Below, one piece after another: positions 15,442 to 37,230 of a stretch of 64,000 bases of DNA. Source of the stretch: Mytilus californianus (taxonomy: Eukaryota); the NCBI RefSeq assembly GCF_021869535.1, contig NW_026262581.1:54932001-54996000 (forward strand), read 5' to 3'. The number at the start of each line of letters is the position of its first letter. Position 1 is the first letter of the stretch. The notes beneath the pieces were generated by a model that did no database searches, was not told where the DNA came from, and saw only the letters and a list, made by a program, of their open reading frames with translations. The position numbers and the translations under genes were made by a program.

Positions 15442-15620
15442 TTTCAACACCGGCAAAGCAGACGATTGAAGCTCTTCTTCGTTGAAAACCAAGAACAGTA
15501 CAAAGTTCAAAGTCTCGTATCACATGTGATCTGTCATGGAGGGCAAGAGGAGCAAATTTTCAGATTTTGGTTAAATTTTTACGTATTAATGATAAATCAT
15601 CTGTTAACATTCAAAGAACA
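15442..15620. promoter_or_regulatory. Compact bidirectional promoter/5' UTR region between REDIC1 and ABCD
   Basis: 179 bp between divergent ATGs (15441 minus, 15621 plus). Contains the perfect palindrome ATCACATGTGAT (15519-15530, E-box core) and the DR1-like AGTACA-A-AGTTCA (15497-15509). Confidence 0.6.
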
Positions 15621-18600: not shown

Positions 18601-21600
18601 TTGAGAATGGAAATGGGGAATGTGTCAAAGAGACAACAACCCGACCATAGAGCAGACAACAGCCGAAGGCCACCAATGGGTCTTCAATGCAGCGAGAAAC
18701 TCCCGCACCCGGAGGCGTCCTTCAGCTGGCCCCTAAACAAATATGTATACTAGTTCAGTGATAATTGACGTCATTCTAAACTCCAAATTATACACAAGAA
18801 ACTAAAATTAAAAATGATACAAGACTAACAAAGGCCAGAGGCTCCTGACTTGGGACAGGCGCAAAAATGCGGCGGGGTTAAACATGTTTTTTGAGATCTC
18901 AACCCTCCCCCTATACCTCTAGCCAATGTAGAAAAAACAAACGTACAACAGTACGCACAGTAAAACTCAGTTTAAGAGAAGTCCGAGTCCGTTGTCAGAA
19001 TAGGAAAAAAAAGAAAATAAACAAAATGACAATAATACATAAATAACAACAGACTACTAGCAGTTACTGACATGCCAGCTCCAGACCTCAATTAAACTGA
19101 TTGAAAGATTATGTCTTCATCATATGAATATCAGGCACAATCCCTCCTGTTAGGGGTTTAGTATTATACCGTCATAAAATATATGAGAAGAACATATCTG
19201 TTTTCATAGGATCAGAGGTGGATGATGACCCAGATGGAGGTGTAAGCGAAAGAACAAAAGCCTTCACTACAGCTAGGAACTTACTGATTAATTGTGCCGA
19301 TGCTATTGAAAGAATGATGTCTTCTTATAAAGAGGTAAAACAAAGATATGTGAAAGAAAAGTTTTGGACATTTATTTAAACTTAATTAAATTGGGAGGGA
19401 ATATAAGGAACAACAAATGGGAAATCATGGACAGGCTCTGTATTCATTTGGAAAAAAAACGTTTAATTAAGAGTATAATGTTATTACATCCATTTTATAT
19501 ATCACCATAGATACCTTGTGAAACCTGTCGAAACGGAACTTCTTAAGGGCTAAAAAATTTGTTTAGTTTATACAGGTGTTTGGTTTGTACAGGTTCAAAA
19601 TACATCGATAATTCATCAAAAGGGCAACAGGAATCACAAAAATACTGGACAGTACATGTACAACATACATTTATATTCCACCAACTCCTTACTCCTAGAA
19701 AAAGACATTCAAACAACAATCAACAACACATGGTTTAGATGTTTGTATAAAGGGAATTTGGAATTAGTCTGGTTTAGGCAGATTTGGGTTAAGTTCTAGG
19801 TTCAGTGATGACAGGTTCTAATGTAAACTACACTGTATGACTTCAAAGTTAAACTGATCTTTGTATTTTTAAGGACAATGCATTATACATTTATTTATTC
19901 GAGAAAAAAAATTACCCACCTATAATGATAAATAATGTTTTATCCTTCCATAGCCATAGGAGAGTTCCGGGATAGTTGTTATTTCAATGTTGAGGTTGAA
20001 AAGTTCTACCAAATGACATTTTTCTTTGCATCTGGCTAGTTTTTAACACAGAGGAATTGGCAGATGGAAAGATTTAATAGATTTCCACTTCAAAAAATTT
20101 ACTCCACATTTCTATTTTTACCCCTTCACCCTGTCAGATGAAAACCTACCATAAGATGACATAATCAATAAATAATTGATATTTTCATTCAGAAGAGGTT
20201 GTATTGATCCTTAAAAGTCTTTTTCCATAGTAACTTACACATTTTAAGGAACAAACATGGGCAGAAATATGATTTCTTTATATTAGGAGTGACTAGAATA
20301 GTTGTATGGTTGGAAAATTTTATGTACACGTATGATCAAAGTTTATAATATTTTTTACCTTTCAAATATTAGTTGTGTGTATTATCTATGTTTAATATGA
20401 ATTATTTACATTATAGATAACTGAACTAGCTGGATACACATCTAGAGTTTCAGAAATGTTCGAAACTTTCAATGATATCAGACAGGGAAAGTACAAGAGG
20501 ACAATTGTGACAAAGCAAAAAAAGGGAAAGTCAAACTTAAAGAAAATTTCTGGACCATTAGAAATAAAAGGTATTTGATTACATAAATGATTCTGCACCT
20601 TTTGTCAGCAAGTGACCATAAGAGGGCTATAGTTTAGGACCCATAGTCTTAAAACAAAAGTTCTCTCTAGCAAGAGGAAAAAGCAGGAACTCAACTCATT
20701 GATGCTGTATAATATGTATAATTTTTTTGTTCAGATATAGTATCCCTTTTTTTTTTTTTAGCAATTACAGAAATAAACTAGGGATGGCAGTGCTCTCTCA
20801 GTTTCCATAAAATAAAAATGTCTTTTTCCATTATTGAAACACTGGTTTAATTCACTCGTAATCTAGTGCAACGAAAATAGTTGTGTTTATTGATTCAAGC
20901 TTTCATTCTGGTTTATGGTGACAGAATATGGCTTGATGAAAGAACTGTATTGCATATTTATATAATTTTTTTCAGCCTCACCACTTTGATTATGGGAACA
21001 TAACGGTAGATAAAATGGAAATAATATTTTGATTTTAAAATTTAAAGCTAATTTTTTTTTAAAGAACAATAACTGTTAGAGAAATCATGTTTTTTTCATT
21101 AATTATTATTTTATAATGAAGATGACAAGAAAAAATAATATTATCAAAATTCTATGTATTAATTTTATTTTCAGCATATACTTTTCCCAGTACGTGCATA
21201 AGTGTATCCTTTAACAATTAATTTTTTATTATAACATAATAAAACTGTTAATATGCATCTTCACTAGCCAAGGGTTATGATCCAGTCCCCCTCCTCTTAA
21301 CCCTACAAGTTCCGGCTTAATCTGCCAAGGGTGAAGAGGCTACCAAAGATGATTAATATGATGCTGTTCACAGAACTGTGAATGAAAGATCTTAGGATCC
21401 CTTCACAGTTAATATAGTTTTGAATAGCTAATAATAAATTAAATGAATGATTTCAGGGAAGGTAATTGACACAGAGTCTGTTATAGACACAGAAGATTTA
21501 GCCATCATTACACCTAATGGAGATGTTATTGTAGCCAGTCTGACTATGAGGGTAAGTTAGAGGAAAGGACAATTTATTGGAGTAGAAGAAATGAGGAAAA

Positions 21601-24600
21601 AGTCAGCAGTGATTACTTATTTCATAAAAGATGCCGTCAACTGACAATTTTTGGCAGTTTCTGTAACAATTTGAATGAAGTTTATCAATGGATGAATATT
21701 GTGTGGAAATCTTTGCCATAACTACAGAAAAGGAGTTGTTCAAGTTAAACTTATAGTTATCTGCTTTTATTAACTTACAAAAAGTATATACAGTGTTTCT
21801 TTGATAAGGACAATAAATAACCATGAACAATTCAGGCGTTAAAATTTTGATATAAATCAATTTAGTACTCTATACAAGAAATGATATATATAGAAGGAAT
21901 CAATTTTAACATTTAAGATTTTAAAAACTTTTATCTAACTTGCTGTTTATTGAAATAGTGACCTGGGGCTCATGCTACCAGGCAACTGGGGGAAAGAAGT
22001 CACTTTCCTGTCTATCATATAAAAATATGAAGAAGTGGTATGGTTGCCAATGAGACAACATGATTTTTAATATGGTTTAAATTTACTGATAACAAAATCA
22101 ATATTTATACCAATAAAAACAATATTAAAAGATCTAATTACAGTGTTGAATTGGTAACCTTTCAGAATAAGTTTATTTAAAGGATTTATCTGATAAGTTT
22201 ACCCAGATCATATCATTTCTATGTTTAGTAAACATCACCTAAAATTAAGGATGTGCTACTCTGTTTGAAATAAGTTTTCTACAGGAACAGCCAAACTTGC
22301 AAACCAAATCATTGTATCTATGGAAGAATTTAGTAAAGGTTTTAAGGAATTTGTGGTAACGAAATCCCTGACTTAATAATTTACCAGTAATACATAGATT
22401 ACTCTCATTGAAATCCAAAACGTCACTACAGATACTGCTATCAGTAAGGTGTCCCATTTAGAACATTTTAAGTATCTAAATTTACTCACTATATGGTGGC
22501 TGAAATGAATCCAGCCTTTAACTTTTGAAGCAAGCTAAGGTTTTTTCTTAAGTTTCCTTGTTCAAAAACATTTCTTTTTGCTTGGTATTTGAATTTGAAA
22601 CCAAAATGTAAATATCATATTCATTCTTTAAATAAAAAAAAATAGGTCTAACCAAGATATATTACATTATAATTGGTTGAACAGGGGGATAATTCTGGAT
22701 TTTTATTAAAATCTTTCTTATTTCAGGTTGAACCAGGCATGCATCTTCTTATAACTGGACCAAATGGTTGTGGAAAATCCTCATTGTTCAGAATTTTTAG
22801 TGGATTGTGGCCTGTGTACAAAGGAAAACTTCAGAAACCTCCACCAACTTCAATGTTTTATATCCCTCAAAGGTATCAATTTATTTTGTAAATTAAATAG
22901 TATTTTATGATCTTCTTTATAGGGATTTATTTTTGTCAGGGGTTTTAGTTTTTTGTGGATAATATATATACATGATATAAAACAGCAAATTATCAAAACT
23001 AAGAGTTTAATAAAAATTCTAGAATGAAGATAGATTTCAAATTAGAATCTCCACAGAGATTTCGTTATGTAAACAAACACAGCTTGTGTGTATTGTCCAA
23101 TGTCAAGGTTCTTTGAGCAAATATCATTTCCATTTTGCTTTTCACACAAGTTCAATGGATACATACCTCTACAACCTGGCATTTGACAATTCTGGAATGT
23201 TTACAATATTACCTTGGCTAGTTTGGAATAAGAATAGCAGATCTACCATTCTGGAGTGTCTTACATTAAATTGATCTTTTTTCCAAGGTATCATTATATT
23301 TTTACCATTTCAGAATGGTAACCGTACATACCATTGAAAATGATACTTTACAAATTTGGTGTGTCGAAAGCGCTTTCATCAATAACACTTGAATCCCAAA
23401 ATTTAAAAGCCTTGGATACATGAACACTTGACAAGCTATTCCACAAAAAGGGATCAAAAAATCATAGCCAACACCGTCAGGTCAACTTTGCCTGTGGGAT
23501 TTTGAACCTTAGATTTCTTCATTTATTAACAGAAAATTTTGGAAATCAAATGGTGAGGCACTAACTACTAGGCTGATTATGTATCGAACCACTATTAGAA
23601 AATGAAAACTTGTTAAAAATTTTTTGCATCGGAAGCGCTTATCTGGATTTATCGGGTCAAGTAGTAAATAGGGGATTGTTGTTCCATCAGAAGAATTGAG
23701 GGGTAAATCAGTTTATATGTACATAAGTTGACAGGTTGACAGTTTTAATTTTTATGTACATAGGTCGACAGATCAACAGTTTGAAAGGTCGACATAAATA
23801 AATGGGCATTATTGGTAAACTCTCGACTGTCAAACACTATTTCATCATTTCTTTTTAAAGTTTTTGTCAACTGTCGACCTGTCTACTTGTCAACTGTCAA
23901 CCTGTTGACCTGTCAACTGTCTACTTGTTTTAAGATTGTTACCACTTAAGCATTATTCTGGTGTAATGAAATAATTTGATTTTGTTGACTTCATTTACGT
24001 CAACTGTCGACCTGTCAACTTACAAGAATACACAAGTGTACGAATTTATTATAAAAGCTGGAACTGTATTACCATTTATCCTACATGAGCCGATTCATCT
24101 TCATCAGGAATGTTCCAATCCTAATATTTGAAAGCCAGGAATGTATACATAATTGACAAGTTATACAAAAACGAGGGTCCTAAGTCTTAAAATAATAGCA
24201 AAAGTCATCTAAGGTCAACTAAAAGCTGCCTTTTGATACATTCATCTACTGTCTATTAATATATTCATATAAATTGTCTATTTGAAAATCAAAATACAGA
24301 TGCCATGCTATTGACATTATGTAATTTAATTTAAAATATTTTTTTATAGACCCTATATGTCTATAGGAACATTGAGAGACCAAGTGATATATCCAGATAA
24401 TGTAGAGGATATGAAGAAGAAAGGCATGATTGAAAAAGACTTAATGAATATACTGAATATAGTCAACTTGCAACACATAGTTGACAGGGAAGGAGGTATA
24501 TTGTTTAAAATTTTTAAATTAAAATGTTTTTTTACTTGGTTTGTCCTGTCATTTTGTATGTGGGGCATGCATAAAATTGAGAATGGAAACAGGGAATGTG

Positions 24601-27600
24601 TCATAGAGACAACAATCCGACCAAAGAGCAGAAGATAGCCCAAGGCCACCAATGGATCTTCAACACAGTGAGAAAATTCCACAACCTTAGGCGGGCTTCA
24701 GCTGGCCCCTAAAAATGTTTTCCTGATGTTTATGGTAATTTAACGTCTAGTCTCATCATATTGATGCCTATATATCTATACATGTAGTCTTTTGAAACAT
24801 CTATTGCAAATATCAAAGTTAAGACAATACCCATGTCCATATATAAAAAATTAGAAGATGTGGTATGATTGCCAATGAGACGACAACTCTCCACCAGGTT
24901 GCACTCTGATAAACTATTTATTCCTTCAATCATTTATATAGCTGGCAGTAAAAGTAGTTTTCTGTATATACACAAACTTTTTGTTTTTGAATTTTTTTAA
25001 TATTTTCACAAATGTTATTGAGAAACCTGCATTGACTATCATTTAATGAAAAATACCTAGATTTGATAAGGAATCAATTACAAGTTTAAAGAGATTTGGG
25101 AAAAAATCACTGAAATTTATCAATGATCCCATTAAATGTACAAATTTATTATCAATCTCCAAATTTATACTGGAACTGTAATAACATGAGACATGGGAGA
25201 TGGTAAAGCATAGCACTTGTGTTTATGCAATTTTATATTATGCATTAGATTACCACAAGTAGTGAAGTAAAAAGTAAAGTGTGAGTTTTAATTATTAGGA
25301 TGTTCATTTTCCACTCTTAAAGAAAAGCGACATATATACAACTTAAGTCTCCAAGTTACAATTTGTAATGTAACTTATAAGCATATTATATATGCTGTAT
25401 TTGCAATGATTGATTAATTGATTGATTGATTGTTGGTGTTAAACACCACTTTCAGAACTCTTGGCTTTATCTTGGCAGCAAGTTATTATTGATTGATGAA
25501 GCCATAGTGTCCGACCTTCAAAGTTATTATTGATTGATGAATCCAGAGTCTCTGACCTTCAGTAAGAAAACTGGCAAACCTATTCAATTAGAATTGGAGT
25601 TCAATGTGCAGGGTTCAAACTCACAACCTCAGTGTTGACTGGCTAGTAATACTGTAAATAAACTACTTAGACCAAGGCCCTTATTTGCAAAGAAGATGTT
25701 TGTATGATTTTAATTTCTAAGTCAATATAAAAATAAGGAGATGAGGTATGATTGCCAATGAGACAACTATCCCCCAAAGTCCAAATAAAGTGGATGTAAG
25801 CAATCATAGGCAACCGTACGGTCTTCAACAATGAGAAAAACCCATACTGTATAGTCAATGTCTGTTATAAACCATGTATCTTCTTCTGTAGGTTGGGATT
25901 CAGAAAGTGATTGGAAAGATGTGTTATCTGGAGGAGAGAAACAGAGAATGGGCATGGCTAGGATATTTTATCACAGGTTCGTGACTTATTATATAAGAAT
26001 CTAAAACAGGTGACAGTTCAAGACAAGAAAATGAAGAACAAGATTTCATGTGGTAAAATTTTAACAAAAACAAGGTTTGTTGCTAATTGTCTAGTCTTGC
26101 ACTTTCATTTGTATATCATTATTTTTACTTCCACTGATATCATCAAAATTCACCAAAAACGACATTTGAGAGTTAACAATTTTGACAGAGTGCATTTCAA
26201 AATTTTATCATTATTGAAAAATGCTAGCTTTTAAATGTTAACTATACTTCAAATGGAAAAATCTAAAAATCACCCACTTTTGAAGGTGAGGTGTAACTTT
26301 AGAAGAACTTATTTAACTTTTCTCACAATGGGTAAAACAACATTAAAGACAACAACACCCGTACATTACCTCAAAGTAATGGTTTGTTATGGTCTACATG
26401 TTTCGCTAACAAGGGTGGTGTCTTCAGGACAAGTAATAGTATGAAATGAAACACTGAAGTACAAAACATGCAGTTATGACAGTCATGACAACGTTATTGT
26501 TAAATTGAAAGTGAAAGTAAAGTATAAATAAAGTTATTGATAGAAGAGTTAGTGTTTTCTTGTAGCTGTAAACGATGTGGTTAGTGTCTATTCTGACTGT
26601 GTTGCAATATTCTCCTGCAAGGTTCCTAAGGGTTACGTTATATAGAAAGTGAAAGTGAAAGTAAATGTTAAATTGTCAGTTTCATTTCGCAAATGAACAG
26701 TACTTCACTGATCATTCCGTACCATTTCATTTGGCTTCATTCTCAAGGAGGTACTTCTTCCAATTGTGTTGGGACTATTGTTAGATGTATGGTCATCAAA
26801 GTTGTGGAAATCGTTGTAGATCAGTTACAATTTGAGGATTTGCATAATATCCATGTTTCCAGTTTATTTTCACAACTATGTTGTGTGGTTCCTGTGGTTC
26901 ATTCTGTTTCTGGTTCTCTCTACTTTTTTCTTAACAAGTTCCCCCAAATCTCCATATATTCATAGTCATATTTGTTGTATGGTATTGTTGGGCTGCTGTC
27001 TCATTGATCCCCCTCTTTTCAATTTATTCAGTCATATTTGTTGTAGGGTGTTGTTAGGCTGCTGTCTCATTGATTTTCCTCCTTAAATCTCCATTCATTT
27101 ATAGTCATATTTGTTGCAGGGTTTTGTTGGGCTGCTGTCTCATTGATTTTCCCTTCAAATCTCCATTTATCATAGTCATATTTATGCAGGGTTTTGATGG
27201 GCTGCTGTCTCATTGATTTTCCTCTAAATATCCATTTACTCATAGTCATATATTTCTTGTAGGGTTATTTTTGGCTGCTGTCTCATTGATTCCCCCCAAT
27301 TCCCCATTTATTCATAGTCATATTTGTTGGAGGGTGTTGTTGGCCTTTTGTCTTATTGATTTTCTCCCAAATGTCATTTTTTTTTCAGTCATATTTGTTG
27401 CAGGGTTATGTTAGGCTGCTGTTTCATTCATTTTCCCCCTTATTTCCCTTTATTCATAGCCATATTTTTACATGGTTTTGTTGGTCTGCTGACTCATTGA
27501 TTTTCCTACCTTTATATCAATTTTTCATAGTCATATTTGTTGCATGGTTTTTTTGGCTGCTGTCTCATTGATTTTCCCTTCAAATTCCATTTTCCTTAGT

Positions 27601-30600
27601 CATATTTGTTGCAGGGTTTGTTGGGCTGCCGTCCCATTGATTTTTTTACGACCGCAAAAAATCGGTCGTATATTGGTATGATGTTGGCGTTGGCGTTGTC
27701 ATAGTCGTTGTCCGAAGACACATTGGTTTTCGCACAATAACTTTAGTTTAAGTGAATGGATCTCTATGAAATTTTACCATATGGTTCAATACCACAAAAG
27801 GAAGGTTGGGATTAATTTTTGAGGTTATGGTACCAACAGTTAAGGAAAAAGGGGCCAAAAATAAGCATTTTTGTAACTTCCAGACAATAACTTGTGTTTA
27901 AGTGTATGGATCTCTCTGAAATTAATAATGGGGTCAATTACTTTTGAAAGTAATTAATTACATTCAATTACAATTACAAAATCTTCAATTAAATTACACA
28001 TTACATTTGACTTTTTTTGACAATGTAATTAATTACTTTCCAATTACTTGGCAAATGTAATTAATTACTTCAATTACTTTTGAAAGGAAAATTTCGAACA
28101 TGCATTTATTCTATCATATGTACATAATTATCATACATTGCTTTATAGTAATAACAAATGAGATCTACAGTGACTATTTTCAAATTCAGCAAGTATCAAA
28201 GAAGAGTAAAAGTTAAATATCTGGTGTGTTAAGGTAATAAAGAAAAAACAAACATAAATCTGAAGTGCACATAATACTTTGTCTATCAGGAATCGTTAGG
28301 ACTAGATGTCTGGTTTAATTTAATGCACAAAATGATAAAAAGCTTTATTCAATATTTGGAAAATATTAAATTTTGTTTAATTACCTATTGAAATTTTATG
28401 TTTCAATGTATTTCATTGAAAATGATACAAGAAGAGAGCCCTATAGATAAAATTTTATTTTTTTTATTTTGATCACAACTTATTAAAAATTATTTTTCCT
28501 AAAGAAATGATTTAGAAAGTCTGCCTTTTATTAAAAATATAATGTAGTTTTAATCACAATTAATTGATTTTAAAAAAATCATGTACCTAGGGGTATATTT
28601 ATCTCTCTTTAATTGGCTTAACACCTGTTTAACATGCAAACATATCTGTTGTAAAAACAGTCATTATATAGTTTATGATAGAACAAATAGCCAGAGGTTA
28701 TATTTATTGATTGACTTATGACCTTTCAAATTGATTATGTTAAATCAATGTCTAACAATATCCATCTGAATATACATGTAGGTAACAAGCTAATTAAGGT
28801 ATAAGACAGTGACTTTCTAATGGTTTCTTTTAAACACAAATTATGGCATGTTTCTACAATATTTTTTTTTCTTTTTAATTTTTTGTTCATTCATTACAAA
28901 ATAAAGAATCTTCCATGGTTGTGTAATTCCAGAAGGTATACTGTGTTGGCTTTGATTTGTCAGCTAACTACATTTGCTAAGGTCATGGCTTTTCATAAAT
29001 TTTTGAGAAAAACACAAGATTCAACCTTTCTGATCCCAAATTTCAAATGTAATTGAGTTGTAATTGAAAAGTAATTGTCAATTACAGACAATTTTGGCTT
29101 TGTAATTCATTACTTTCAATTACTTGTAATTGAAAAAATGATCAATTACACATTACATTCAATTACTTGAGAAATTGTAATTAATTACAGCCAATTACAA
29201 TTACATATTTCAATTACCCCATGTCTAGAAATTATACCACAAGTTTCCATACCACAATGGGATGGTTAGGATTGGCTTTGGGGGTTATGGCTCAAACTGT
29301 TTAGGAATTAGGGGCAAAAAAGGGGAAAAACAAGGGTTTCCTGGTTAATGGACAATTTAAAAGCAGTGTAAGGGAGGTAATCCCAAAACAAAATTGTACA
29401 ATGTTGTACAATGTTGGATTACCTCCCTTACACTGCTTTTAAATTATCTATTCAAGTCTTTTATGATGTATTTAAATTGGTAATTATGGTTGCAAACTCC
29501 ATTGGAAATTTGAATTGAGATTATGACCATATCTTGAGGGAAAGAATTTTTTTTGGGGGGGGGGGGGAGGGGGGTGGTCAATTCGCAACAGCATAGTGTA
29601 TTGCATAAAAGCAAAAAATTGAATATAAATTCAAATCATATAACAAATTCTAAGTTCTTTGACTACAGTTATTCGGTGTCAGAAACCTATTATGTGTCAA
29701 ATATTTAATTACAATCCAAATTCAGACCTGTATTAAGCACGAATATTGTGTCCATTTTCGCCCCAACTGTTCATGGTTGGACCTCTGCGGTCGTATCCAG
29801 CTGCGCTCAGCGAAGCATTTTATTTCCTGTTAAATTTATTCATTCATAGTTGTATTTGTTGTATTGTTTTGTTGGTCTGCTGTCTCATTGATTTTCCACA
29901 AATTTCGATTTATTCATATTCATATTTGTTGTAGGGTGTTGTTGGGCTGCTATCTCATTGACCTTCAATTTATTCATAGTATTTTTTTATGGAGATTTTG
30001 ATGATTTGCTATCATGTGACCAGACATTCTTTGAAGATAAAAGGATAATGATAATCAGTCTGCATGGTGTTTTTTTTTATTGAGTTGTAGACAATAAACA
30101 TAATTTGTCTAATTGGGGCTTTATTTCACACAGGTGGGCAACTGAGGTTTTCTGCTTTATCTTGATTAAAGAAAAGCCTCTCGTGTGTATTCTTTTTATT
30201 TTACTTCTTTTGTAAAACAGTTTGACAAATTAGTTATACAAATTGATAGTTCAAATTATATATCATGCATACAAAACAGATTTTATCATGAACAATTCAT
30301 TTAAAAGTCATGTGTCTATTCATATTGATATAATTATACATTTTTTTAATTATATGAAATACAATTTACCCACAACTTGTACAATTTTATTTGAGTGTAT
30401 ATGTATGTCCATTTGTTTAAATAGAGTTTCTTTGATTTTGTTTTTTTTAAAAGAAAGTCAAATTATACATGATTTAGATAAATAAATTCAGTATGGTAGG
30501 GAGAGTAATTTATGATGAATATTTGAGATGAAATTTATAAAGCTGATAAAAGAAAAGAATGAAAAATAACTTGAATTCAAAAATCATGAAAATAAGATAG

Positions 30601-33600
30601 TAATTTGAAAGAATATTTATGATGTAATGTTTTATACTGTTAGAAGTTAAAAATTGAAATCAAAATAAAATTCAATTTTTGCTTGTGAACCACACTATTA
30701 AGTGTGTAAACTGTAATAACACAGTACAACATACCCAATACACTGAGGGTGTAAAATGGAACTAAGTAATTAGACATTGGTAGCATCAGATGACACTGAG
30801 TAATCTTGGTAGTTAGAGATGACACTTAATAACCTTTATAGTGCTTGATGACACTTCGTAACCTTGATAGTGTCAGATAGCCCTTAATAACCTTGTTAGT
30901 GTCAGGTGACATTTTGTAACTTTAAAAGTGTCAGATGACACCTTGTAACCTTAACGCTGCACTCGTTGCTTTGTGCGGATCAAGCACAGCACAAACTTGA
31001 AATAAAAGTCTAGCAAAGTTTGTCTCACCCAATAACTGGTGAGCAATGCCACATAACACTGGTGTACACATGTAAGGAAAATTTGCTTTTAAACTGGCAT
31101 TTGTTATTATTGATTTAAGTTGTCGTAAACAAAATCTGCATGATGTTATGTCTTGTAGATGGTAGTAACATAGGAAGCTGAGGAAATATGCAAATGCTAA
31201 TGGATGATACACTGGATTGTTGTTTGTAACATCTACTTGTAACTCTTGTGGAATTATTGATGACTTCTCATGAAATAGAAGAGGAAAAATTGTTAATGTT
31301 TTATATACTCGATAAATTGTTTCTTTTTTCATCAGATTCAGCTCATGTTTTTGGAAATGATTTAATTTGTCCTCAGTCATGCTTGATATAGTATAAAATT
31401 TCTCATCTGTGTATTTCTGCAATGTATAATTTACTACTGATAATGAGGCAAAGTAATTTTTGTGCACATAGAAGAAAGATGCCAACGTCAGCCATCCTGA
31501 TACTGCATCTGAATTTACACCAATCAATAAATGGCTCAGATCATATTTGTACTTGAAGTATTGCTGTTTGTTTTCTGAGCTATAGTGATGTTTTGAAGCA
31601 TCTAGAGCAAACCTACTTGCTACTGATAAATGTAAAGCAAATAGACCTCTAGATAAACCTGTTTTAGCATTATGTAGAAAATGATATAGTAGACGCATAT
31701 TCTTTATACTTGGAATATAAGAAGATGTTTCTGGTACTATTCTGATAATTCCAAAATATTCCGGGATTTGGAAGGACAGTCTTTGATAATCTTGAAGGGT
31801 CTCAGAAGACTTAAAACAAACAATTCCTTGCTCGTTTAAATTCTTAAGTATGGTGGTTAATTTTTCTTTGTTCATCACATTGAACCGTGTGCAAAAAAAG
31901 TTATTGTCAGGAATAAAATAATGGGGCAAGATTGAATATTTTACACAGTACAGCAGTCTTTGTAAACATGTCATGAAACATGGTATAATATTACCAGGTC
32001 TCCATAAATTTGGGTCTGTTTCTTCTGAAATCCAAAACATTAGTGTTTTCAAGAAGTATGAACACAATAAACCTTTCAAATCTTCATGTTTCTCTACTAT
32101 TTCCTTCAACAAGATTTTTAACAGAGCATAGCATAATAATTGTGTGTGACTGAATGCATATATAAGAAATTTTTCTGCTACAGAAAATGAAATTCGCCAT
32201 TCTAGATTTTCATTTACAGATCCTTTGCAGCCTATTGGCACGAATAACACACCGCAAGATATTATTTTCGAAATGATTTCAGGTGAAGGCCATGTAGTAC
32301 GTGATCTGCTAACCCATGGCTGTGCTTGAAATATCCATTTGTCACATTTAAGGCAAAATGCTATATCCATAACATCATTTATATCAGATACACATGGTCC
32401 ATGAATTTTTGTAAACATTTTTGCTATTTTGGGAGGATAAATAGACAAATGGACCAGTTTATAATTTTCACTAGAAAACATACATTCCAAATGATTTCTT
32501 TGCCACTTGTTTTTGAAATATGGCAGCATATAATGATAATAATTAGGCAGACATAATTGTGTAAAACATGGTAAGGTCTCCTCAGTGTTCATAATCAATG
32601 GAATTGAGGGACCATCAAAAACAGCTTCTTTTTCTGATTGATACACCTTAAAGAAAGGATCAACAGCCATTAGATCAAAATCACTGCTTTTGAAATAAAG
32701 GCCTTCACCTTTACTTCCGCTTGTTATGTGTTTAAAAATATATGTTTGTTCCATATCAATAATAGTTGAAGTTAATCTTCTTATTTTCACAACTTCTTTA
32801 GATCCAATCTTTTTGCAAAGATATTTATAAAAATTCAACGATTCATATTCCTCTGTGGACATTCCAGCCATTTTCTGCATATCTGTCTACAAAATAAATT
32901 AATCCTAGAAAAAAGTAACAACAACTTCTTTATCTTACAATACTGTTTTTTTTTTTTTTTTTTTACTTGGTAAATTTTGGGACTATTATACTAATATATA
33001 TAATATTGATATTAGCATAATAGTCCCAGGTAAATTATATTACTTGGTAAGTTGAGGACTGCCAAAAGAATTCCAACAAGAGTGTTGTCCTGCTGAGACA
33101 AGCAAGTCTGATAAAATAATCCTTACTAGTAGATGAAATAAAAATTGTTAAGAACACAAAGTCTAGCTGTCAGTATAACATTTTAAATTTAGTTGCACAG
33201 ATTTATGCAGGAATCTATGCACATTCCCCATCAATATGGTGGCAAAGTGAAATATCTTCATTGAAAGTGGGAGGTTTAGCTAGCTATTAAATCAGGTTTA
33301 ACCTATCATTTTCTTTGGATAATGCCTGTACCAAGTCAAGAATATGGCAGTTGTTTTTCAATTGTCCTTTGATTGAAAGCATTTGATTTTGACAGCTTTT
33401 ATGGGCTTCCCCTTTTTGAATTTTTGAATGTCTTCAGTGACCATATTCCATTCTGTTCAGCTGAAATTTGAGGACATTTTCACACTAGCCAGATGTAGTT
33501 CAAATAACTTCATTTTTTGGGGGGTGTTTAGCAAGTAAAAGTCAATAATTTTTTTTTAAATCAGAAAATCAATAAAAGGACTGCTTCTGAAGTTAAAGAG

Positions 33601-36600
33601 ATCATCTGAGTTTGATAGGGTTTGACATTAATTTGGTAGATTAGTGAAACATAATTACAGTGCCCCATAATTATGTTCGTGCCCTTCCTTTGATAGATAC
33701 TTACTTTGGATTCATTGATATTCGTTGGATACCAATTTGCATGGATTATGTTGGTACAGGGGAACCACAATTTAAAATGTTCAACGAATTACATATTTTC
33801 TTAGGAATGTACGCAGACTTTGCCAAAACAATGAAATTAAATATCCATGAAAATGCAAGTTTTCATCAATCCACGAAAATTGGTACCGATGAAAATAAAT
33901 GAATCCACAGTAATTAAGCAGGGGCATACTATTCTTTCCAGTAGTGTGTTCTCCATCCTTTTTGTTCAGATGGAAATGTGATATGGTGAGCAGAGCATGG
34001 CTAGTTGTCCCGTAGACACAGTCATATTCTTATATCAAAAAATACTTTGATGTAAATATCCTGGGAAAGGAAAACACCAACACAATTTTACATGAAATTG
34101 ATTTAAATTTCTAAATTTCTTACCTTTAATTCTTTCTCTGCCATTTTCTATAATTACTATTGTCTTCTTCAGTTTTTTGCAGGCTCCATAATGTCAACAA
34201 ACTGTTGAAAACTTTTCTTTTACTATTGTAAACATATTGTTAATCTTTTGAAAGAAAATTACTGATTATATATAGTGACTTTGAAACAAGGAACTGTTAA
34301 AACAATGGAAAGTTTGAAGTTGATGAGAACATAGAAATTGAAACCAAAACTACAGGTTTTTTCATTTTATTTATGAAATAGAAGAATTGAAAAAACAGTC
34401 ATGAGTTATATTTAATAATAGTAGTATCAACATTTCATAAGGAAAAAAACAATTGTTTCTTAATTCTATCTTTTACTTTCTCAATGTAAGTTTCCTTGAA
34501 TTGACTCAGCTACTTGATATGATACGGACATTTACGCCTACTTGTCCTTGAAATCTTCATCATCGAATTGTTACATAATTGGGCATTGAGTATACATACT
34601 AAATGGATTTTTCAAATAAATTTCCAGTTTCAGTTTTACACAAAGTAGCCTAATATTTTTTTAGCTCAAATGGCCTGAGGGGCCTGAGGAATTTTAAATT
34701 TCATAAAAATGTGAAAATTAGCAAATAAAAAAGATATGTAAACAGATAATGTAAAGAGCTCTCTCATGATGGGTTATTAATTTACTTTAAAATTAAGTTT
34801 TTTTGTGATGATGATGTTATTGTTAAATTGAAAGTACTAGTGAAAGTAAAGTATAAATAAAGTTATTAATAGAAGAGTTTTATTGTAGCTGTTAAGGATG
34901 TGGTTAGTGCCTATTCTACCTGTGTTGCATGAATAAATTCAGATAAAATGTAAACACAAATAACAGGATTTTCAGTTATTTAATTTCCTAGTAAAAACTG
35001 AATTTGTTTATCAAAAATAATTTGAGTTCTAATTAATACAGTGGGTCATTAATGATTTACCTCCCATTTTTGTTACAATTGTTGTTCTTGTATAGATTTT
35101 CACTATAGTTTCTACTATGCCTGCATTTTAAAGTTTTTGTAAAATTTTAACTACTCAGCAGTTGATCAACAGCTTGTTTTTTACTTGTTTGAAATAAGTT
35201 TTAGTATGGCTATGATTTAAATGATAGATTAAATTTTTATCTTTTACTAGTATATACTGTAAAGTACCAGTCAAATTTGAAGAATCTTTGATTTTACAAT
35301 TTTTAACCTTGAAAGTACATGATGAATGTTATTACAAGCAAAAGCCATTCATGGATATTGAACAATGATGAAATTGGCATATGTTTATATTTTGACATTT
35401 CAGTTGCTAGTCAAAAGTAATATTTAGCTAATGTTATTTCAGACCACAGTATGCATTACTTGATGAATGTACCAGTGCTGTTTCTATAGATGTAGAAAGT
35501 AAGATATACCAAACAGTCAAGGACAGTGGGATAGTATTACTTACTATCACTCATAGACCTTCATTGTGGTAAGATATAATGTATTTGTACTTATTTCTTT
35601 GTGTAATTATTGTTTGATATTTCAGTGAAGATTATTTCTTTGAAAGTAAATTTACATGTAACTAACAAAAAGGTGGTAATGCAAAAAGTGATAGACTACT
35701 GGTTACTGAAACCCATTTGGATTAATGTGTTTAGAGATGTCATTGTATCAGAGTTTTTCTATTACTTTCCTTAATTCACAAATCATGTTACTTTAAATGA
35801 TTTGTTATAGCTTGACCTAATTTTCTGTTAAATTAGATAGATTTTATTGTATGTGATTATACAAAACTATTCAGCAACATACATGTCATATGCAGTGAAG
35901 ATTATGTGAGAAAGAATTTCTTTCTTGGAATCAAATGTATACCTTAAGTCTAATTATATCCCTACTCAGGTAATAGGTGGTACACTGCATTCACATTGTC
36001 CTTCCTCCTGTACATTCTTCCCTCCATCAGTCTGTTTATTCGAAACTCTTTTTACATATTAATTTCTCTTCTGTATGATAGAATAATTCGGTGTGGAACT
36101 ATATAAGGATGATCATGAGTTGTAACATTTTAGCTATTCTGAGATCTGTCGGACAGTCACTTCCTGTTAAACAATACTTTAAATTTTATTTTACCCTCTG
36201 ACCATGGAATTTTTCTCAGTTTGTGTATCATGGAATGATTTGTTATTTGGCCTGGAATTTTATAAAGTAATGAGTTGTACTGTGAAAGCAGTTTTCATAT
36301 TTCCGATACTTTAATTTTTTTATACCCACTAAGCATGGACTGTTAACTTATTGTCCAATAACAATGGCATATAATTTGCATGTTATCCCTTGCAAATCTT
36401 TGTTTTGGTAGAATGAGCTAGTAACTAAGTTAAATGTACATGTGGTCAAAGTAGATGATCAATATCTTTTATATGCAGATCACTTTGACCAACCGCCATC
36501 AATCTCTCGTTTAAGGAGCTAACTCTAGATTAAGGGACATTACTCCTGAGAATCACAACTTCATTTAGGTCAACCATTTTCATAAATTTATTCCAAACTG

Positions 36601-37230
36601 CTAAGTAACACAGATTCATTTAATTCTGATATATGCTAAAGAGCATTTATGAAATTGGCTATTACCAATGCCTTACTGATATAAAGAATTATCTCTCTTA
36701 AATGAGGTCCACCTAACCCCCGCCCCTCCTTAAATTTTACTGAGTTTGTTATCAAAATGACATAGGATTGAATTACAAGTGTTTGATGGAGTTAATCAGT
36801 TCATTTTCAAATGTTGATAGTTTTGTCAGTACACTACAATTTCCATTTCCTTCACAAATTGCATGCAGTATATAAATCAATAGAATAAAGCATTAATCTT
36901 CAACCTATATAAGATACAAGAAGTAAAAAGAATAAAAGTAGCAGCATGTTTTTCTTTTTTTCACTTGTGTTCAGATTTGTTGTTTTTTACAGGAAATTTC
37001 ATACCCATCTGTTACAATTTGATGGAGAAGGAGGTTGGAGAATGGAAGAACTTAATACAAACACTCGTCTTACCCTTAACGAAGAAAAACAGAAGCTTGA
37101 GACCCAATTAGCTGGTGTACCTAAGATGCATAACAGACTATCAGAGCTTTGCTCTATATTAGGAGAGGATTCAGTCTTACTATCCAGTCATGATAATTTA
37201 GATGATGTAGATGAATTGGTAGAGAGTTGA
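15621..37230 (+). CDS. ABCD2: Peroxisomal ABC half-transporter, ABCD1/ABCD2 (ALDP/ALDR) ortholog, 740 aa, 10 coding exons
   Basis: Exons 15621-16541, 16939-17125, 19210-19334, 20417-20570, 21457-21551, 22727-22872, 24350-24495, 25892-25976, 35443-35568, 36993-37230; all GT-AG and phase-consistent, total 2223 nt. Motifs: EEIAFYGG (EAA), Walker [10 protein letters not shown], signature LSGGEKQR, Walker [15 protein letters not shown]-loop ITHR. ATG 15621 is preferred over the TTG at 15567 used by the ORF track. The symbol is nominal: an invertebrate gene is likely co-orthologous to ABCD1 and ABCD2. Confidence 0.96.
17560..18350 (+). repeat. 'TGACCTTGACC' satellite-like HINE remnant in ABCD intron 2
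   Basis: Same units as 41465-42695. Confidence 0.65.
18590..19197 (+). mobile_element. Abundant interspersed repeat (TAAAATTGAGAATGGAAATGGGGAATG family) ending at the ABCD exon 3 acceptor
   Basis: Partial second copy at about 24568-24715; elevated GC; ends about 12 nt before exon 3. Confidence 0.65.
22245..22457 (-). mobile_element. Penelope-like retroelement RT C-terminal fragment
   Basis: [34 protein letters not shown] resembles the LLxQGF/YxxxKLxKxFxKFxxRY segment of Penelope-like elements (from memory). Confidence 0.55.
23724..24022. mobile_element. MITE whose TIRs are built of 8-bp GT(C/T)GACAG subrepeats
   Basis: TAAGTTGACAGGTTGACAGTT at 23724 vs CAACTGTCGACCTGTCAACTTA ending at 24022. 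Confidence 0.7.
25400..25680 (-). mobile_element. tRNA-derived SINE, degenerate
   Basis: Minus strand shows GGTCTAAG...GAGGTTGTGAGTTTGAACCC (A/B-box-like) and an (AATC)n tail; similar (AATC)n-tailed ends near 11030-11065 and 53540-53610. Confidence 0.55.
26493..26606 (+). repeat. 114-bp direct repeat, copy A (tandem GAAAGT IRF-type site plus TATAAATA)
   Basis: Aligns with 34816-34929 apart from two 6-nt indels and a few substitutions; GAAAGTGAAAGT at 26507-26518, TATAAATA at 26523-26530. Confidence 0.8.
26645..26689. promoter_or_regulatory. Triple GAAAGT IRF-type element plus AGTTTCATTTCG
   Basis: GAAAGTGAAAGTGAAAGT at 26645-26662 (canonical IRF1/2-type repeat); AGTTTCATTTCG at 26678-26689. 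Confidence 0.45.
26940..27645. repeat. ~70-bp satellite array (10 units), resuming at 29822-29978 (2 units)
   Basis: Unit TTCATAGTCATATTTGTTGCAGGGTTTTGTTGGGCTGCTGTCTCATTGATTTTCC...; the array is split by an insertion. Confidence 0.9.
27646..29821 (+). mobile_element. Helentron-associated (HINE/DINE-like) element inserted in the satellite
   Basis: 5' ACGACCGC...CGGTCGT hairpin, GGCGTT/GTCGTT microsatellite, 3' sub-terminal TGCGGTCGT (29786) and GCTGCGCTCAGCGAAGC stem-loop; inserted in a T-run. Confidence 0.75.
27923..29227. mobile_element. MITE with AATTAC-rich termini nested in the HINE
   Basis: TAATAATGGGGTCAATTAC... / ...CAATTACCCCATGTCTA; apparent 5-bp TSD GAAAT (27918-27922, 29228-29232); removing it joins the host sequence CTCTCTGAAATTATACCAC. 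Confidence 0.75.
30781..30954. repeat. 6 x 29-bp minisatellite overlapping the cGLR stop codon
   Basis: Units start at 30781, 30810, 30839, 30868, 30897 and 30926 (consensus TAGTGTCAGATGACACTTNNTAACCTTNN). The unit at 30926-30954 encodes LRLQGVI-stop on the minus strand. Confidence 0.9.
30931..32880 (-). CDS. cGAS-like receptor (cGLR; Mab-21 nucleotidyltransferase plus C-terminal helical/TPR-like region), single 649-aa coding exon nested antisense in ABCD intron 8
   Basis: Uninterrupted ORF with SGSKGEG...SDFDLM (D67, D69), HGPC...MDIAFCL (D172), [27 protein letters not shown] and [10 protein letters not shown] (Mab-21 motifs); C-terminal [15 protein letters not shown] and CGIAHQLLG helical region. 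Splice acceptor (TTTTGTAG) lies 6 nt upstream of the ATG. Confidence 0.9.
   Translation of the reverse strand: MQKMAGMSTEEYESLNFYKYLCKKIGSKEVVKIRRLTSTIIDMEQTYIFKHITSGSKGEGLYFKSSDFDLMAVDPFFKVYQSEKEAVFDGPSIPLIMNTEETLPCFTQLCLPNYYHYMLPYFKNKWQRNHLECMFSSENYKLVHLSIYPPKIAKMFTKIHGPCVSDINDVMDIAFCLKCDKWIFQAQPWVSRSRTTWPSPEIISKIISCGVLFVPIGCKGSVNENLEWRISFSVAEKFLIYAFSHTQLLCYALLKILLKEIVEKHEDLKGLLCSYFLKTLMFWISEETDPNLWRPGNIIPCFMTCLQRLLYCVKYSILPHYFIPDNNFFCTRFNVMNKEKLTTILKNLNEQGIVCFKSSETLQDYQRLSFQIPEYFGIIRIVPETSSYIPSIKNMRLLYHFLHNAKTGLSRGLFALHLSVASRFALDASKHHYSSENKQQYFKYKYDLSHLLIGVNSDAVSGWLTLASFFYVHKNYFASLSVVNYTLQKYTDEKFYTISSMTEDKLNHFQKHELNLMKKETIYRVYKTLTIFPLLFHEKSSIIPQELQVDVTNNNPVYHPLAFAYFLSFLCYYHLQDITSCRFCLRQLKSIITNASLKANFPYMCTPVLCGIAHQLLGETNFARLLFQVCAVLDPHKATSAALRLQGVI
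32977..33028. mobile_element. 52-bp hairpin mini-element with 8-bp TSD in the cGLR intron
   Basis: 20-bp arms 32978-32997 / 33009-33028 (1 mismatch), flanked by GGTAAATT at 32969-32976 and 33029-33036. Confidence 0.7.
33705..33912. mobile_element. Short MITE (TACTGTGGATTCATT...AATGAATCCACAGTA family)
   Basis: 3' end AATGAATCCACAGTA near 33912; a related 5' portion at about 41041-41160. Confidence 0.55.
34124..34244 (-). CDS. Upstream exon of the cGLR: 5' UTR with 6-codon uORF plus 7 coding codons (MAEKELK)
   Basis: AAG|GTAAG donor at 34123. ATG 34144-34124 is 21 nt, preceded by an in-frame TAG, and splices in frame to ACA GAT ATG at 32886. uORF ATG GAG CCT GCA AAA AAC TGA at 34189-34169. 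The 5' boundary (weak AAG acceptor at 34246/34245, or a TSS) is uncertain. Confidence 0.6.
34334..34637. promoter_or_regulatory. IRF-E/ISRE-like motifs upstream of the cGLR
   Basis: GAAATTGAAACCAAAACT at 34334-34351 and TTTCCAGTTTCAGTTTT at 34621-34637 fit GAAANNGAAA / AGTTTCNNTTT. Motif match only, in AT-rich DNA. Confidence 0.4.
34816..34929 (+). repeat. 114-bp direct repeat, copy B
   Basis: Same sequence as 26493-26606, but an extra ACTAGT splits the tandem GAAAGT. Confidence 0.8.

What the first reader, a model, noticed from the sequence alone, without database searches (positions are those of the whole stretch)
25977..35442. Intact cGAS-like receptor hidden antisense inside intron 8 of the peroxisomal transporter ABCD1/2
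Seen: intron 8 (9466 bp) is by far the largest ABCD intron and carries on the opposite strand an uninterrupted 649-codon ORF with an intact GS...DxD...D nucleotidyltransferase triad (S56, D67, D69, D172), followed by a roughly 250-aa helical C-terminal region. Known: cGLRs make cyclic dinucleotide second messengers for STING signalling and are greatly expanded in bivalves; mussels show extensive gene presence/absence variation. Inference: this is a lineage-specific, possibly dispensable immune sensor inserted in a conserved housekeeping gene with its own inducible promoter. Induction would run polymerase head-on into ABCD transcription, and the cGLR mRNA is complementary to the ABCD pre-mRNA intron. 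That could couple innate immune activation to peroxisomal fatty-acid import. Two motif changes (TLPCFT where I recall TxPGFT; KWIFQA where I recall WPxxA) suggest a diverged specificity.
Basis: partly seen in the sequence, partly recalled or inferred. Interest (0 to 1): 0.82.

Follow-up and report, generated by a model that had tools for sequence, protein, structure and literature searches.

The report
cGAS-like receptor gene nested in ABCD intron
A mussel innate-immune enzyme gene of the cGAS-like receptor family sits backwards inside the largest intron of a peroxisomal transporter gene; the gene looks functional and is conserved there in several Mytilus species, but both the gene family and this kind of nesting are already known, and nothing shows that the two genes regulate each other.

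Summary
A 649-codon ORF lies at 30931-32880 on the minus strand, inside intron 8 (25977-35442, GT..AG) of a 10-exon, 740-aa ABCD1/2-type gene. That intron is 4.5 times longer than the next largest.

- **Family:** the ORF passes both Mab-21 Pfam models. Its AlphaFold model matches cGAS at Z 27.6 (2.8 A over 300 residues). G55-S56, D67, D69 and D172 are kept. Residues ~456-649 form a weak TPR-like module.
- **Gene structure:** the ORF is exon 2 of a two-exon gene. A 21-nt start exon at 34144-34124 and a 1237-nt intron give 658 codons.
- **Not private or recent:** M. edulis and M. galloprovincialis carry annotated orthologues at the same antisense position. dN/dS against M. edulis is 0.35 at dS 0.235. 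Five DNA samples of the window's species and a sister species also hold it.
- **Large family:** it is one of more than 600 Mytilus paralogues.
- **No expression evidence:** zero RNA reads in a 6% subsample of one run.
- **No coupling evidence:** regulatory coupling to ABCD is untested speculation.

Bivalve cGLR radiations and cGLR-TPR fusions were catalogued in 2023. Other notes of this scan report cGLR genes elsewhere in this genome. Verdict: a new member of a known kind, of modest interest.

The parts
34124..34144 (-). Coding exon 1 of the nested cGLR-like gene (ATG at 34144; MAEKELK; GT donor at 34123-34122)
   Evidence: Aligned to the first coding exon of the M. edulis model P0001; ATG, reading frame and GTAAG donor are conserved
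32887..34123 (-). Intron of the nested gene (1237 nt). It contains high-copy interspersed repeats at about 33149-33936
   Evidence: The ttttgtag acceptor is conserved in M. edulis. DNA word depth reaches about 80,000 in 33149-33936, and RNA reads there run on into unlike sequence
30931..32886 (-). Coding exon 2, including the stop codon.
   Evidence: Pfam Mab-21_C 5.6e-15 and Mab-21 7.3e-06, both above cut-off
31807..32835 (-). cGAS-like nucleotidyltransferase domain (ORF residues about 16-358), with G55-S56, D67, D69 and D172
   Evidence: AlphaFold2 pLDDT 85.6 and pTM 0.85. VIA-align Z 27.6, rmsd 2.8 A, 300 residues to mouse cGAS 4k9b, model range 16-358. G55, D67, D69 and D172 invariant and S56 kept in at least 90% of 68 paralogues
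30934..31515 (-). TPR-like helical module (ORF residues about 456-649). It is preceded by a less confident helical linker (359-455)
   Evidence: Model of the domain alone has pLDDT 74.5. Foldseek finds only weak rows (E >= 0.14), nearly all TPR proteins. VIA wide search gives Z 10-12.7, about 115 residues at 2.8-3.2 A, to 3-TPR domains. No Pfam hit
34145..34760 (-). Conserved upstream region (putative promoter and 5' leader), with a TATA-like tatatataat near 34270 and an ISRE-like site at 34334-34344
   Evidence: 89% identical to M. edulis over about 640 nt, against 75-82% for most of the intron. The ISRE-like match is not above chance. No transcription start has been mapped
25977..35442 (+). 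Intron 8 of the host ABCD1/2-type gene (9466 nt, GT..AG)
25892..25976 (+). ABCD exon 8 (85 nt; ABC signature LSGGEKQR)
   Evidence: Read directly; weak ABC_tran hit; fits the 740-aa CDS
35443..35568 (+). ABCD exon 9 (126 nt; Walker [10 protein letters not shown])
   Evidence: Read directly. RNA depth 0.66-0.85, first mate on the minus strand. Fits the CDS
15621..37230 (+). Host gene CDS span: 10 exons, 740 aa, ABCD1/2 orthologue
   Evidence: Exon 1 matches ABC_membrane_2 at 6.4e-81. Best PDB match is human ABCD1 at 1e-95, against ABCD3 at 4e-38. Exon chain. Same length as the ABCD gene models in M. edulis and M. galloprovincialis

Best explanation
**What it is (shown).** This is a two-exon, 658-codon protein-coding gene on the minus strand. 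It encodes a cGAS-like receptor (cGLR / Mab-21 family) nucleotidyltransferase joined to a C-terminal TPR-like helical domain. It is one old, dispersed member of a Mytilus expansion of more than 600 such proteins. It lies antisense in intron 8 of the ABCD1/2 orthologue. It already lay there before the window's species split from the M. edulis complex, and it has been kept under purifying selection since.

**How it probably works (inferred).** The protein would act as a cytosolic pattern-recognition enzyme, as characterised cGLRs do. A ligand, probably a nucleic acid or another pathogen product, switches on the NTase. The TPR-like domain may help sense the ligand or gate the enzyme. The NTase then makes a nucleotide second messenger that is read by one of the mussel's STING-type receptors.

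**Why it is nested (inferred).** The nesting is most likely a neutral by-product of a DNA-level duplication landing in a long intron. It is probably not a regulatory device.
For: - Family: Pfam Mab-21 and Mab-21_C both score above their cut-offs. The best PDB sequence hit is Sp-cGLR1 8gjy.
- Fold: a confident AlphaFold2 model superposes on cGAS at Z 27.6, 2.8 A, 300 residues, and on Cv-cGLR1 at Z 25.5.
- Active site: G55, D67, D69 and D172 are invariant and S56 is kept in at least 90% of 68 paralogues down to 37% identity.
- Synteny: orthologues XP_071122587.1 (M. edulis) and XP_076106563.1 (M. galloprovincialis) are nested antisense in a 740-aa ABCD gene. The loci are collinear, and the window ORF groups with them at 100/100 support.
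- Selection: dS 0.235, dN 0.081, dN/dS 0.35 overall, 0.17 in the Mab-21 core. Fisher test p = 2e-11, and 0 of 5000 random-substitution replicates kept the frame open.
- Gene structure: the start exon, splice sites and 640-nt upstream region are conserved. An intron is present, so it is not a retrocopy.
- DNA-level copying: M. edulis has a second copy of about 3.9 kb (promoter, intron and CDS) 7 Mb away.
- Presence: five DNA samples from two studies of the window's species, and a species 3-4% diverged, hold the stretch.
- Known background: cGLR radiations in bivalves and cGLR-TPR fusions are described in PMC9980059.
Against: - No transcript evidence. There were zero reads on either exon in about 1.55 Gb (6%) of one RNA-seq run of the same species, where ABCD exon 9 itself reached only about 0.7x depth. 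No RNA-run assembly holds more than 0.15 of the ORF's words.
- The published cGLR motif is not matched literally. Ser, not Gln or Thr, precedes G55-S56, and the spacer to the third acidic residue is 100 residues against the stated 50-90.
- The TPR assignment rests on weak structural scores only, with no sequence-profile support.
- Enzyme activity, product, ligand and any link to STING are all inferred from relatives.
Confidence: 0.8

Rival explanations
1. Regulatory coupling. The antisense nesting is kept because inducing the cGLR gene interferes with ABCD transcription or splicing, by polymerase collision or by RNA-RNA pairing. That would link immune activation to peroxisomal fatty-acid import.
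For: - The arrangement and orientation are conserved over dS 0.235 in at least three annotated or assembled species.
- The nested gene keeps its own conserved upstream region inside the intron.
- Interference between nested genes has been reported in Drosophila (PMC5174743, listed).
Against: - Conserved position is what simple inheritance predicts. A gene inside an intron cannot easily leave.
- Nested genes are very common: nearly 10% of D. melanogaster genes are in nested structures (PMC3814207). In mammals they show no expression divergence (PMC8467205).
- No expression of the nested gene was detected at all.
- No data bear on ABCD levels.
Confidence: 0.05
2. It is a silent or decaying family member. 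In a birth-and-death family of hundreds, this copy may be transcriptionally dead or on its way to becoming a pseudogene in the window's species, with an ORF that merely has not yet been hit.
For: - No RNA reads were found.
- The protein is not among the collection's proteins: no row carries '-' for sources, and the best hit is 83% identical. So no gene model for it seems to be on record for this genome.
- The C-terminal third evolves quickly, with dN/dS 0.55.
- The derived M. edulis copy P0007 is already broken by a 353-nt insertion.
Against: - The frame is open over 658 codons in an AT-rich genome where the next non-ABCD open stretch is 200 codons.
- dN/dS of 0.35 is significantly below 1, and 0 of 5000 neutral simulations stayed open.
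- Catalytic residues, splice sites and promoter region are all intact and conserved.
- The RNA sampling was very shallow, with the host gene itself below 1x depth.
Confidence: 0.1
3. It is an active nucleotidyltransferase but not a cyclic-dinucleotide/STING sensor. The enzyme might make linear oligonucleotides as OAS does, or signal without catalysis, as was reported for shrimp Mab21 proteins.
For: - The G-S..K-G..L..S-D-x-D motif is shared with pol-beta-type NTases in general, and by my own recollection it resembles the OAS1 motif.
- The motif departs from the published cGLR pattern.
- Crustacean Mab21 proteins are reported to act outside the canonical nucleic-acid sensing paradigm (PMC12928593 abstract).
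- The extra TPR-like domain suggests protein-protein signalling.
Against: - The best structural and sequence matches are cGAS and proven cGLRs rather than OAS.
- Invariance of the catalytic residues across 68 paralogues argues for catalysis.
- Bivalves encode several STINGs alongside large cGLR sets (PMC9980059).
Confidence: 0.2

Closest known systems
Orthologues XP_071122587.1 (Mytilus edulis, 661 aa) and XP_076106563.1 / LOC143075130 (M. galloprovincialis, 663 aa), both annotated 'uncharacterized protein'
   Same: - Same two-exon structure and same domain layout.
- Same antisense position inside the 740-aa ABCD gene.
- 83-84% protein identity to the window ORF, forming one clade at 100/100 support.
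   Different: - Different species: dS 0.235 from the window copy.
- They start MAEKELM where the window has MAEKELK.
- The window's own protein is not in the protein collection.
Characterised animal cGLRs and cGAS (Sp-cGLR1 8gjy, Cv-cGLR1 8gjw, mouse and human cGAS, human MB21D2)
   Same: - The caged NTase core plus helix-bundle fold (Z 25-27.6, about 300 residues, 2.8-3.6 A).
- GS, DxD and D catalytic residues.
- Pfam Mab-21 and Mab-21_C.
   Different: - Only 16-21% identity.
- A 100-residue spacer before the third Asp, and Ser in place of Gln/Thr before GS.
- An added C-terminal extension of about 290 aa.
- No activity, ligand or product is known.
cGLR-TPR fusion architecture listed in the 2023 cGLR census (Li et al., PMC9980059)
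   Same: An NTase core joined to a tetratricopeptide-type protein-interaction module. That paper also reports extreme radiation of cGLR genes in bivalves.
   Different: - Here the TPR assignment is only structural and weak, with no Pfam TPR hit.
- I did not check whether this Mytilus family is in that paper's tables. The paper's main text never mentions Mytilus.
Nested (intronic, opposite-strand) protein-coding genes of animals
   Same: A duplicate gene with its own promoter, wholly inside a long intron of a conserved host gene and on the other strand. [quoted passage not shown]
   Different: Nothing unusual was found. The pairing of an immune sensor with ABCD1/2 is specific to this locus but has no demonstrated consequence.

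Membership tests
cGAS-like receptors (criteria of Li et al. 2023, PMC9980059) | Complete catalytic residues: G-S loop, [DE]h[DE]h, and a later h[DE]h | tested here: met
   G55-S56, D67-F-D69-L and M171-D172-I173. G55, D67, D69 and D172 are invariant and S56 is kept in at least 90% of 68 paralogues. They lie on strands 50-54, 68-73 and 171-179 of the model, as expected for the fold.
cGAS-like receptors (criteria of Li et al. 2023, PMC9980059) | Literal pattern h[QT]GS-X8-20-[DE]h[DE]h-X50-90-h[DE]h | tested here: inconclusive
   The first spacer is 10 residues, which fits. But the residue before G55-S56 is S54 (T53 is one place earlier), and the second spacer is 100 residues, 10 over the stated range. 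The extra length falls in the lower-confidence stretch at about 110-170. This is a departure from a curation filter, not a loss of a catalytic residue.
cGAS-like receptors (criteria of Li et al. 2023, PMC9980059) | Sequence homology across both the NTase core and the C-terminal helix bundle | tested here: met
   PF03281 scores 26.6 bits (cut-off 24.1) and PF20266 scores 55.8 bits (cut-off 24.1). The family profile matches Sp-cGLR1 at 3.6e-18. The first 170 residues match only by structure.
cGAS-like receptors (criteria of Li et al. 2023, PMC9980059) | AlphaFold-predicted structural homology to known cGLR/CD-NTase enzymes | tested here: met
   pLDDT 85.6. Foldseek E 6.5e-11 to Sp-cGLR1, with TM 0.62-0.69 normalised by target. 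VIA Z 27.6, 2.8 A, 300 residues to cGAS.
cGAS-like receptors (criteria of Li et al. 2023, PMC9980059) | Ligand-dependent synthesis of a nucleotide second messenger | not testable with these tools
   Needs recombinant protein, candidate ligands, and TLC or LC-MS.
Expressed protein-coding gene | A spliced transcript on the minus strand | tested here: inconclusive
   Zero reads on the exons in a 6% subsample of RNA run X21, where the host gene's depth was below 1. No RNA assemblies hold the ORF. Selection and conserved splice sites argue for expression.
TPR (tetratricopeptide repeat) domains | Sequence-profile match to TPR families | tested here: not met
   No Pfam TPR family matched at E <= 10 for residues 351-649.
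TPR (tetratricopeptide repeat) domains | Helix-turn-helix repeat solenoid superposable on solved TPR domains | tested here: inconclusive
   Z 10-12.7, about 115 residues at 2.8-3.2 A, on HOP TPR1, PP5 and Sgt1. Foldseek rows are almost all TPR proteins but at E >= 0.14. Z below 13 for helical repeats is within the tool's caution zone, so I call it TPR-like, not TPR.
ABCD1/ABCD2 peroxisomal half-transporters (host gene) | ABC_membrane_2 plus ABC_tran domains, closest to ABCD1 rather than ABCD3 or ABCD4 | tested here: met
   PF06472 at 6.4e-81. PDB ABCD1 at 1e-95, against ABCD3 at 4e-38 and ABCD4 at 5e-17. The signature and Walker B motifs were read in exons 8 and 9. The rebuilt 10-exon CDS is 740 aa. 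By my recollection of human ABCD1, exons 5-9 have the same lengths (95, 146, 146, 85, 126 nt).
Dispensable (presence/absence) mussel genes | Absent from some individuals or from close relatives | tested here: inconclusive
   The stretch is present in all five listed DNA samples of the species, in a sister species, and in M. edulis and M. galloprovincialis. However, the run search lists only holders, so absence in other individuals could not be seen.

The most novel reading that the evidence does not exclude
The most novel reading still open concerns the more than 600 Mytilus proteins built as a cGAS-like NTase plus a conserved mollusc-only TPR-like C-terminal domain. They could form a distinct receptor class in which the helical domain, not the NTase surface, recognises the ligand, as IFIT TPRs bind RNA. 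The fast-evolving C-terminus (dN/dS 0.55) would then diversify specificity. Less likely still, the conserved antisense nesting could let induction of this copy damp ABCD1/2 expression.
Probability: 0.12. Interest if true: 0.6.

Novelty: new member of a known kind. Interest (0 to 1): 0.25.

Why it matters
Mussels are striking for their disease resistance and their expanded innate-immune gene sets. The literature library searched here holds no paper on Mytilus cGLRs.

This locus offers a clean, single-copy representative of a very large Mytilus cGLR/TPR-like family. It is orthologous across species and under purifying selection, so it is a reasonable candidate for biochemical work on product, ligand and the role of the C-terminal domain. 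It also shows that family members spread as DNA cassettes of about 4 kb carrying their own promoter.

It does not change what is known about cGLRs or about nested genes. The proposed link between immunity and peroxisomal lipid import has no support so far.

Tried and rejected
- **Retrocopy origin:** rejected. The gene has a conserved 5' intron, paralogues share the same start mini-exon, and the M. edulis secondary copy includes promoter and intron.
- **Transposon-borne gene:** no support. There are no terminal inverted repeats or LTRs around the roughly 3.9-kb duplicated unit. A direct repeat of about 120 nt (26488-26606 and 34812-34929, 88%) brackets most of the intron interior and is unexplained.
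- **Structured RNAs or ribozymes in the window:** none reached Rfam gathering scores.
- **ISRE/IRF site as evidence of inducibility:** GAAATTGAAAC lies at 34334-34344, but the window holds 2 sites against 1.2 expected, and the site is only partly conserved in M. edulis. It was dropped as evidence.
- **Logan contig L003 (SRR29152235) as possible transcript evidence:** it contains the intron, so it is genomic DNA.
- **Sequence-level alignment of the N-terminal catalytic motif to PDB cGAS:** HMMER alignments begin only at about residue 162, even with the family profile. The N-terminal correspondence therefore rests on the structure match.
- **Other copies in the window:** none found by tblastn.
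- **Catalytic-site geometry:** model coordinates are not exposed to scripts, so it could not be measured.

Full report
**1. Observation**

The window holds one long ORF in the reported interval: 30931..32880, minus strand, 649 codons. The window is about 30% G+C. Its next longest stop-free stretches are 359 codons (ABCD exon 1) and then 200, so the ORF is far beyond chance.

The interval 25977-35442 is an intron with GT and AG ends. The upstream exon reads ..[22 protein letters not shown] and the downstream exon reads [30 protein letters not shown]. These are the ABC signature and Walker B of an ABCD transporter.

Exon 1 (ORF 15567-16565) matches ABC_membrane_2 at 6.4e-81. Its best solved relative is human ABCD1 at 1e-95, against 4e-38 for ABCD3 and 5e-17 for ABCD4.

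I chained ten exons through AG/GT sites into a 740-aa CDS with a single terminal stop. The introns are 397, 2084, 1082, 886, 1175, 1477, 1396, 9466 and 1424 nt.

**2. What the ORF encodes**

- **Pfam.** Mab-21_C scores 55.8 bits over residues 250-345. The Mab-21 NTase domain scores 26.6 bits over residues 172-240. Both exceed the 24.1-bit cut-off.
- **PDB by sequence.** The best match is the coral cGLR Sp-cGLR1 (8gjy, 9.8e-13), followed by cGAS, MB21D2 and MAB21L1.
- **Predicted structure.** An AlphaFold2 model built on 68 relatives is confident (pLDDT 85.6, pTM 0.85).
  - Residues 16-358 superpose on mouse cGAS at Z 27.6, rmsd 2.8 A, over 300 residues.
  - They superpose on oyster Cv-cGLR1 at Z 25.5 (Foldseek).
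- **Catalytic residues.** These are G55-S56, D67-x-D69 and D172.
  - G55, D67, D69 and D172 are invariant across 68 paralogues down to 37% identity. S56 is kept in at least 90% of them.
  - They sit on the expected strands of the model.
- **Published cGLR criteria (PMC9980059).** The fold and homology criteria are met. The literal motif is missed in two small ways. Ser rather than Gln/Thr precedes GS. The spacer before the third acidic residue is 100 residues rather than 50-90.
These residues are conserved across the whole family. P104 and C105 are invariant in the 18-sequence alignment and kept in at least 90% of the 68. W182 is invariant in both, and A186 is kept in at least 90% of both. They carry no information about this copy.

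**3. The C-terminal 290 residues**

- They have no Pfam match.
- They are conserved family-wide: four columns are invariant in 68 sequences, and a further 23 are kept in at least 90%.
- Their language-model look-alikes are mollusc-only clusters.
- Folded alone (pLDDT 74.5), the region gives no significant Foldseek hit. The weak rows are almost all TPR proteins.
- An exhaustive structural search puts 3-TPR domains on top (HOP TPR1, PP5, Sgt1) at Z 10-12.7, with about 115 residues at about 3 A. That range is within the tool's stated caution zone for helical repeats.
- I therefore call it TPR-like only.
- cGLR-TPR fusions are already listed in the 2023 census.

**4. Gene structure**

The ORF is not the whole gene. 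The M. edulis model P0001 has seven codons on a separate upstream exon.

The same exon is present in the window at 34144-34124: ATG GCA GAG AAA GAA TTA AAG followed by gtaag. The ttttgtag acceptor just upstream of the ORF is also conserved. This gives a 1237-nt intron and a 658-codon CDS.

The 640 nt upstream are 89% identical between the two species. Most of the intron is 75-82% identical. The upstream region includes a TATA-like element. An ISRE-like site is present but is not above chance.

**5. Evolution**

- **Family size.** The word-index search found 616 relatives. The 120 best are all from Mytilus species, or from unnamed ENA/Logan assemblies, and most are about 650 aa.
- **Orthologues.** The closest relative (83% identity, XP_071122587.1, M. 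edulis) lies antisense inside a 740-aa ABCD gene. Its 96%-identical M. galloprovincialis counterpart, XP_076106563.1, does too.
- **Synteny.** The window and the M. edulis locus are collinear. ABCD exon blocks are about 86-95% identical, introns 75-82%, and the nested ORF 88%.
- **Phylogeny.** A maximum-likelihood tree groups the window ORF with these orthologues at 100/100 support. The next paralogues are about 0.9 substitutions per site away.
- **Selection.** Against M. edulis, dS is 0.235 and dN is 0.081, so dN/dS is 0.35.
  - By region it is 0.24 for residues 1-170, 0.17 for the Mab-21 core and 0.55 for the C-terminal part.
  - The synonymous/non-synonymous contrast is significant (p = 2e-11).
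  - None of 5000 random-substitution replicates kept the frame open.
- **Presence in individuals.** DNA assemblies of five samples from two studies of the window's species tile the region with few differences. A species 3-4% diverged also has it.
- **Conclusion on age.** The gene is neither a recent nor an individual-specific insertion. Because the run search lists only holders, presence/absence polymorphism cannot be excluded.
- **A secondary copy.** M. edulis has a second copy 7 Mb away. It is a DNA copy of about 3.9 kb comprising promoter, intron and CDS, and it is broken by a 353-nt insertion. This shows how the family spreads and decays.

**6. Expression**

The one RNA-seq run of the same species that could be laid was read to only about 6% (1.55 Gb). 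It gave no reads on either cGLR exon.

ABCD exon 9 reached only 0.66-0.85x depth. The reads inside the cGLR intron belong to high-copy repeats. No RNA-run assembly holds more than 0.15 of the ORF's words.

Expression is therefore unproven. The test was weak.

**7. Interpretation**

The best-supported reading is an intact, selectively maintained cGLR-family enzyme gene with a TPR-like appendage, inherited in place inside ABCD intron 8.

Its mechanism is inferred from characterised relatives, not shown here. That mechanism is ligand-triggered synthesis of a nucleotide second messenger read by STING.

The coupling hypothesis has no evidence for it. Nested opposite-strand genes are the commonest form of gene overlap and usually arise by duplicates landing in long introns (PMC5174743, PMC3814207). 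In mammals they show no expression divergence (PMC8467205; all three listed).

**8. Novelty**

- Bivalve cGLR radiations and TPR fusions are published.
- The orthologues are already annotated, though uncharacterised, in two Mytilus genomes.
- Other notes of this scan report cGLR genes and clusters elsewhere in the same genome.
- No paper in the searched library treats Mytilus cGLRs.
- Verdict: a new member of a known kind.

Noticed in passing
window 26939-27644 and 29823-29994: Two blocks of a tandem repeat of about 70 nt (core ..GGGCTGCTGTCTCATTGATTTT..) inside ABCD intron 8. The block at 29800-29996 has raised DNA depth (about 145-1055 against 3-45 in the next bin), so the unit is repeated elsewhere in the genome.
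   Followed up: partly
window 30789-30962: Six head-to-tail copies of a 29-nt unit (GATGACACTTAATAACCTT..) begin at the stop codon of the nested gene and fill the start of its 3' flank. The right edge of the roughly 3.9-kb unit duplicated in M. edulis falls in the equivalent stretch.
   Followed up: partly
window 26488-26606 and 34812-34929: A low-copy direct repeat of about 120 nt (88% identical, 8.3 kb apart) brackets most of the interior of intron 8, including the nested gene. Its origin is unexplained; it could be a footprint of the insertion or two copies of a small element.
   Followed up: partly
window 33149-33936: Very high-copy interspersed repeats lie inside the nested gene's own intron, with DNA word depth up to about 80,000. 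RNA reads map here only partly and run on into unlike sequence, so they come from other copies.
   Followed up: partly
window 29347-29452: A near-perfect hairpin: 37-nt arms, 95% complementary, with a 32-nt loop. It lies about 1.5 kb downstream of the nested gene and may be a MITE-like element.
   Followed up: no
L004 (M. edulis OY782956.1, 33.02 Mb), 9321-13042: A secondary DNA copy of the nested gene (promoter, intron and CDS, 87-95% identical to the ABCD-intron copy) lies next to an SGL-domain gene. It is interrupted by a 353-nt insertion and is annotated as a 479-aa protein that lacks the NTase hit.
   Followed up: partly
window 34169-34189 (-): A short upstream ORF (ATG GAG CCT GCA AAA AAC TGA) lies 45 nt before the start codon. 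Its ATG is ATT in M. edulis, so it is probably not a conserved feature.
   Followed up: partly
window 15379-16541: Another note on this window reports a head-to-head neighbour gene very close to the ABCD start codon. I confirmed only the ABCD side: ATG at 15621, with exon 1 ending at 16541.
   Followed up: no
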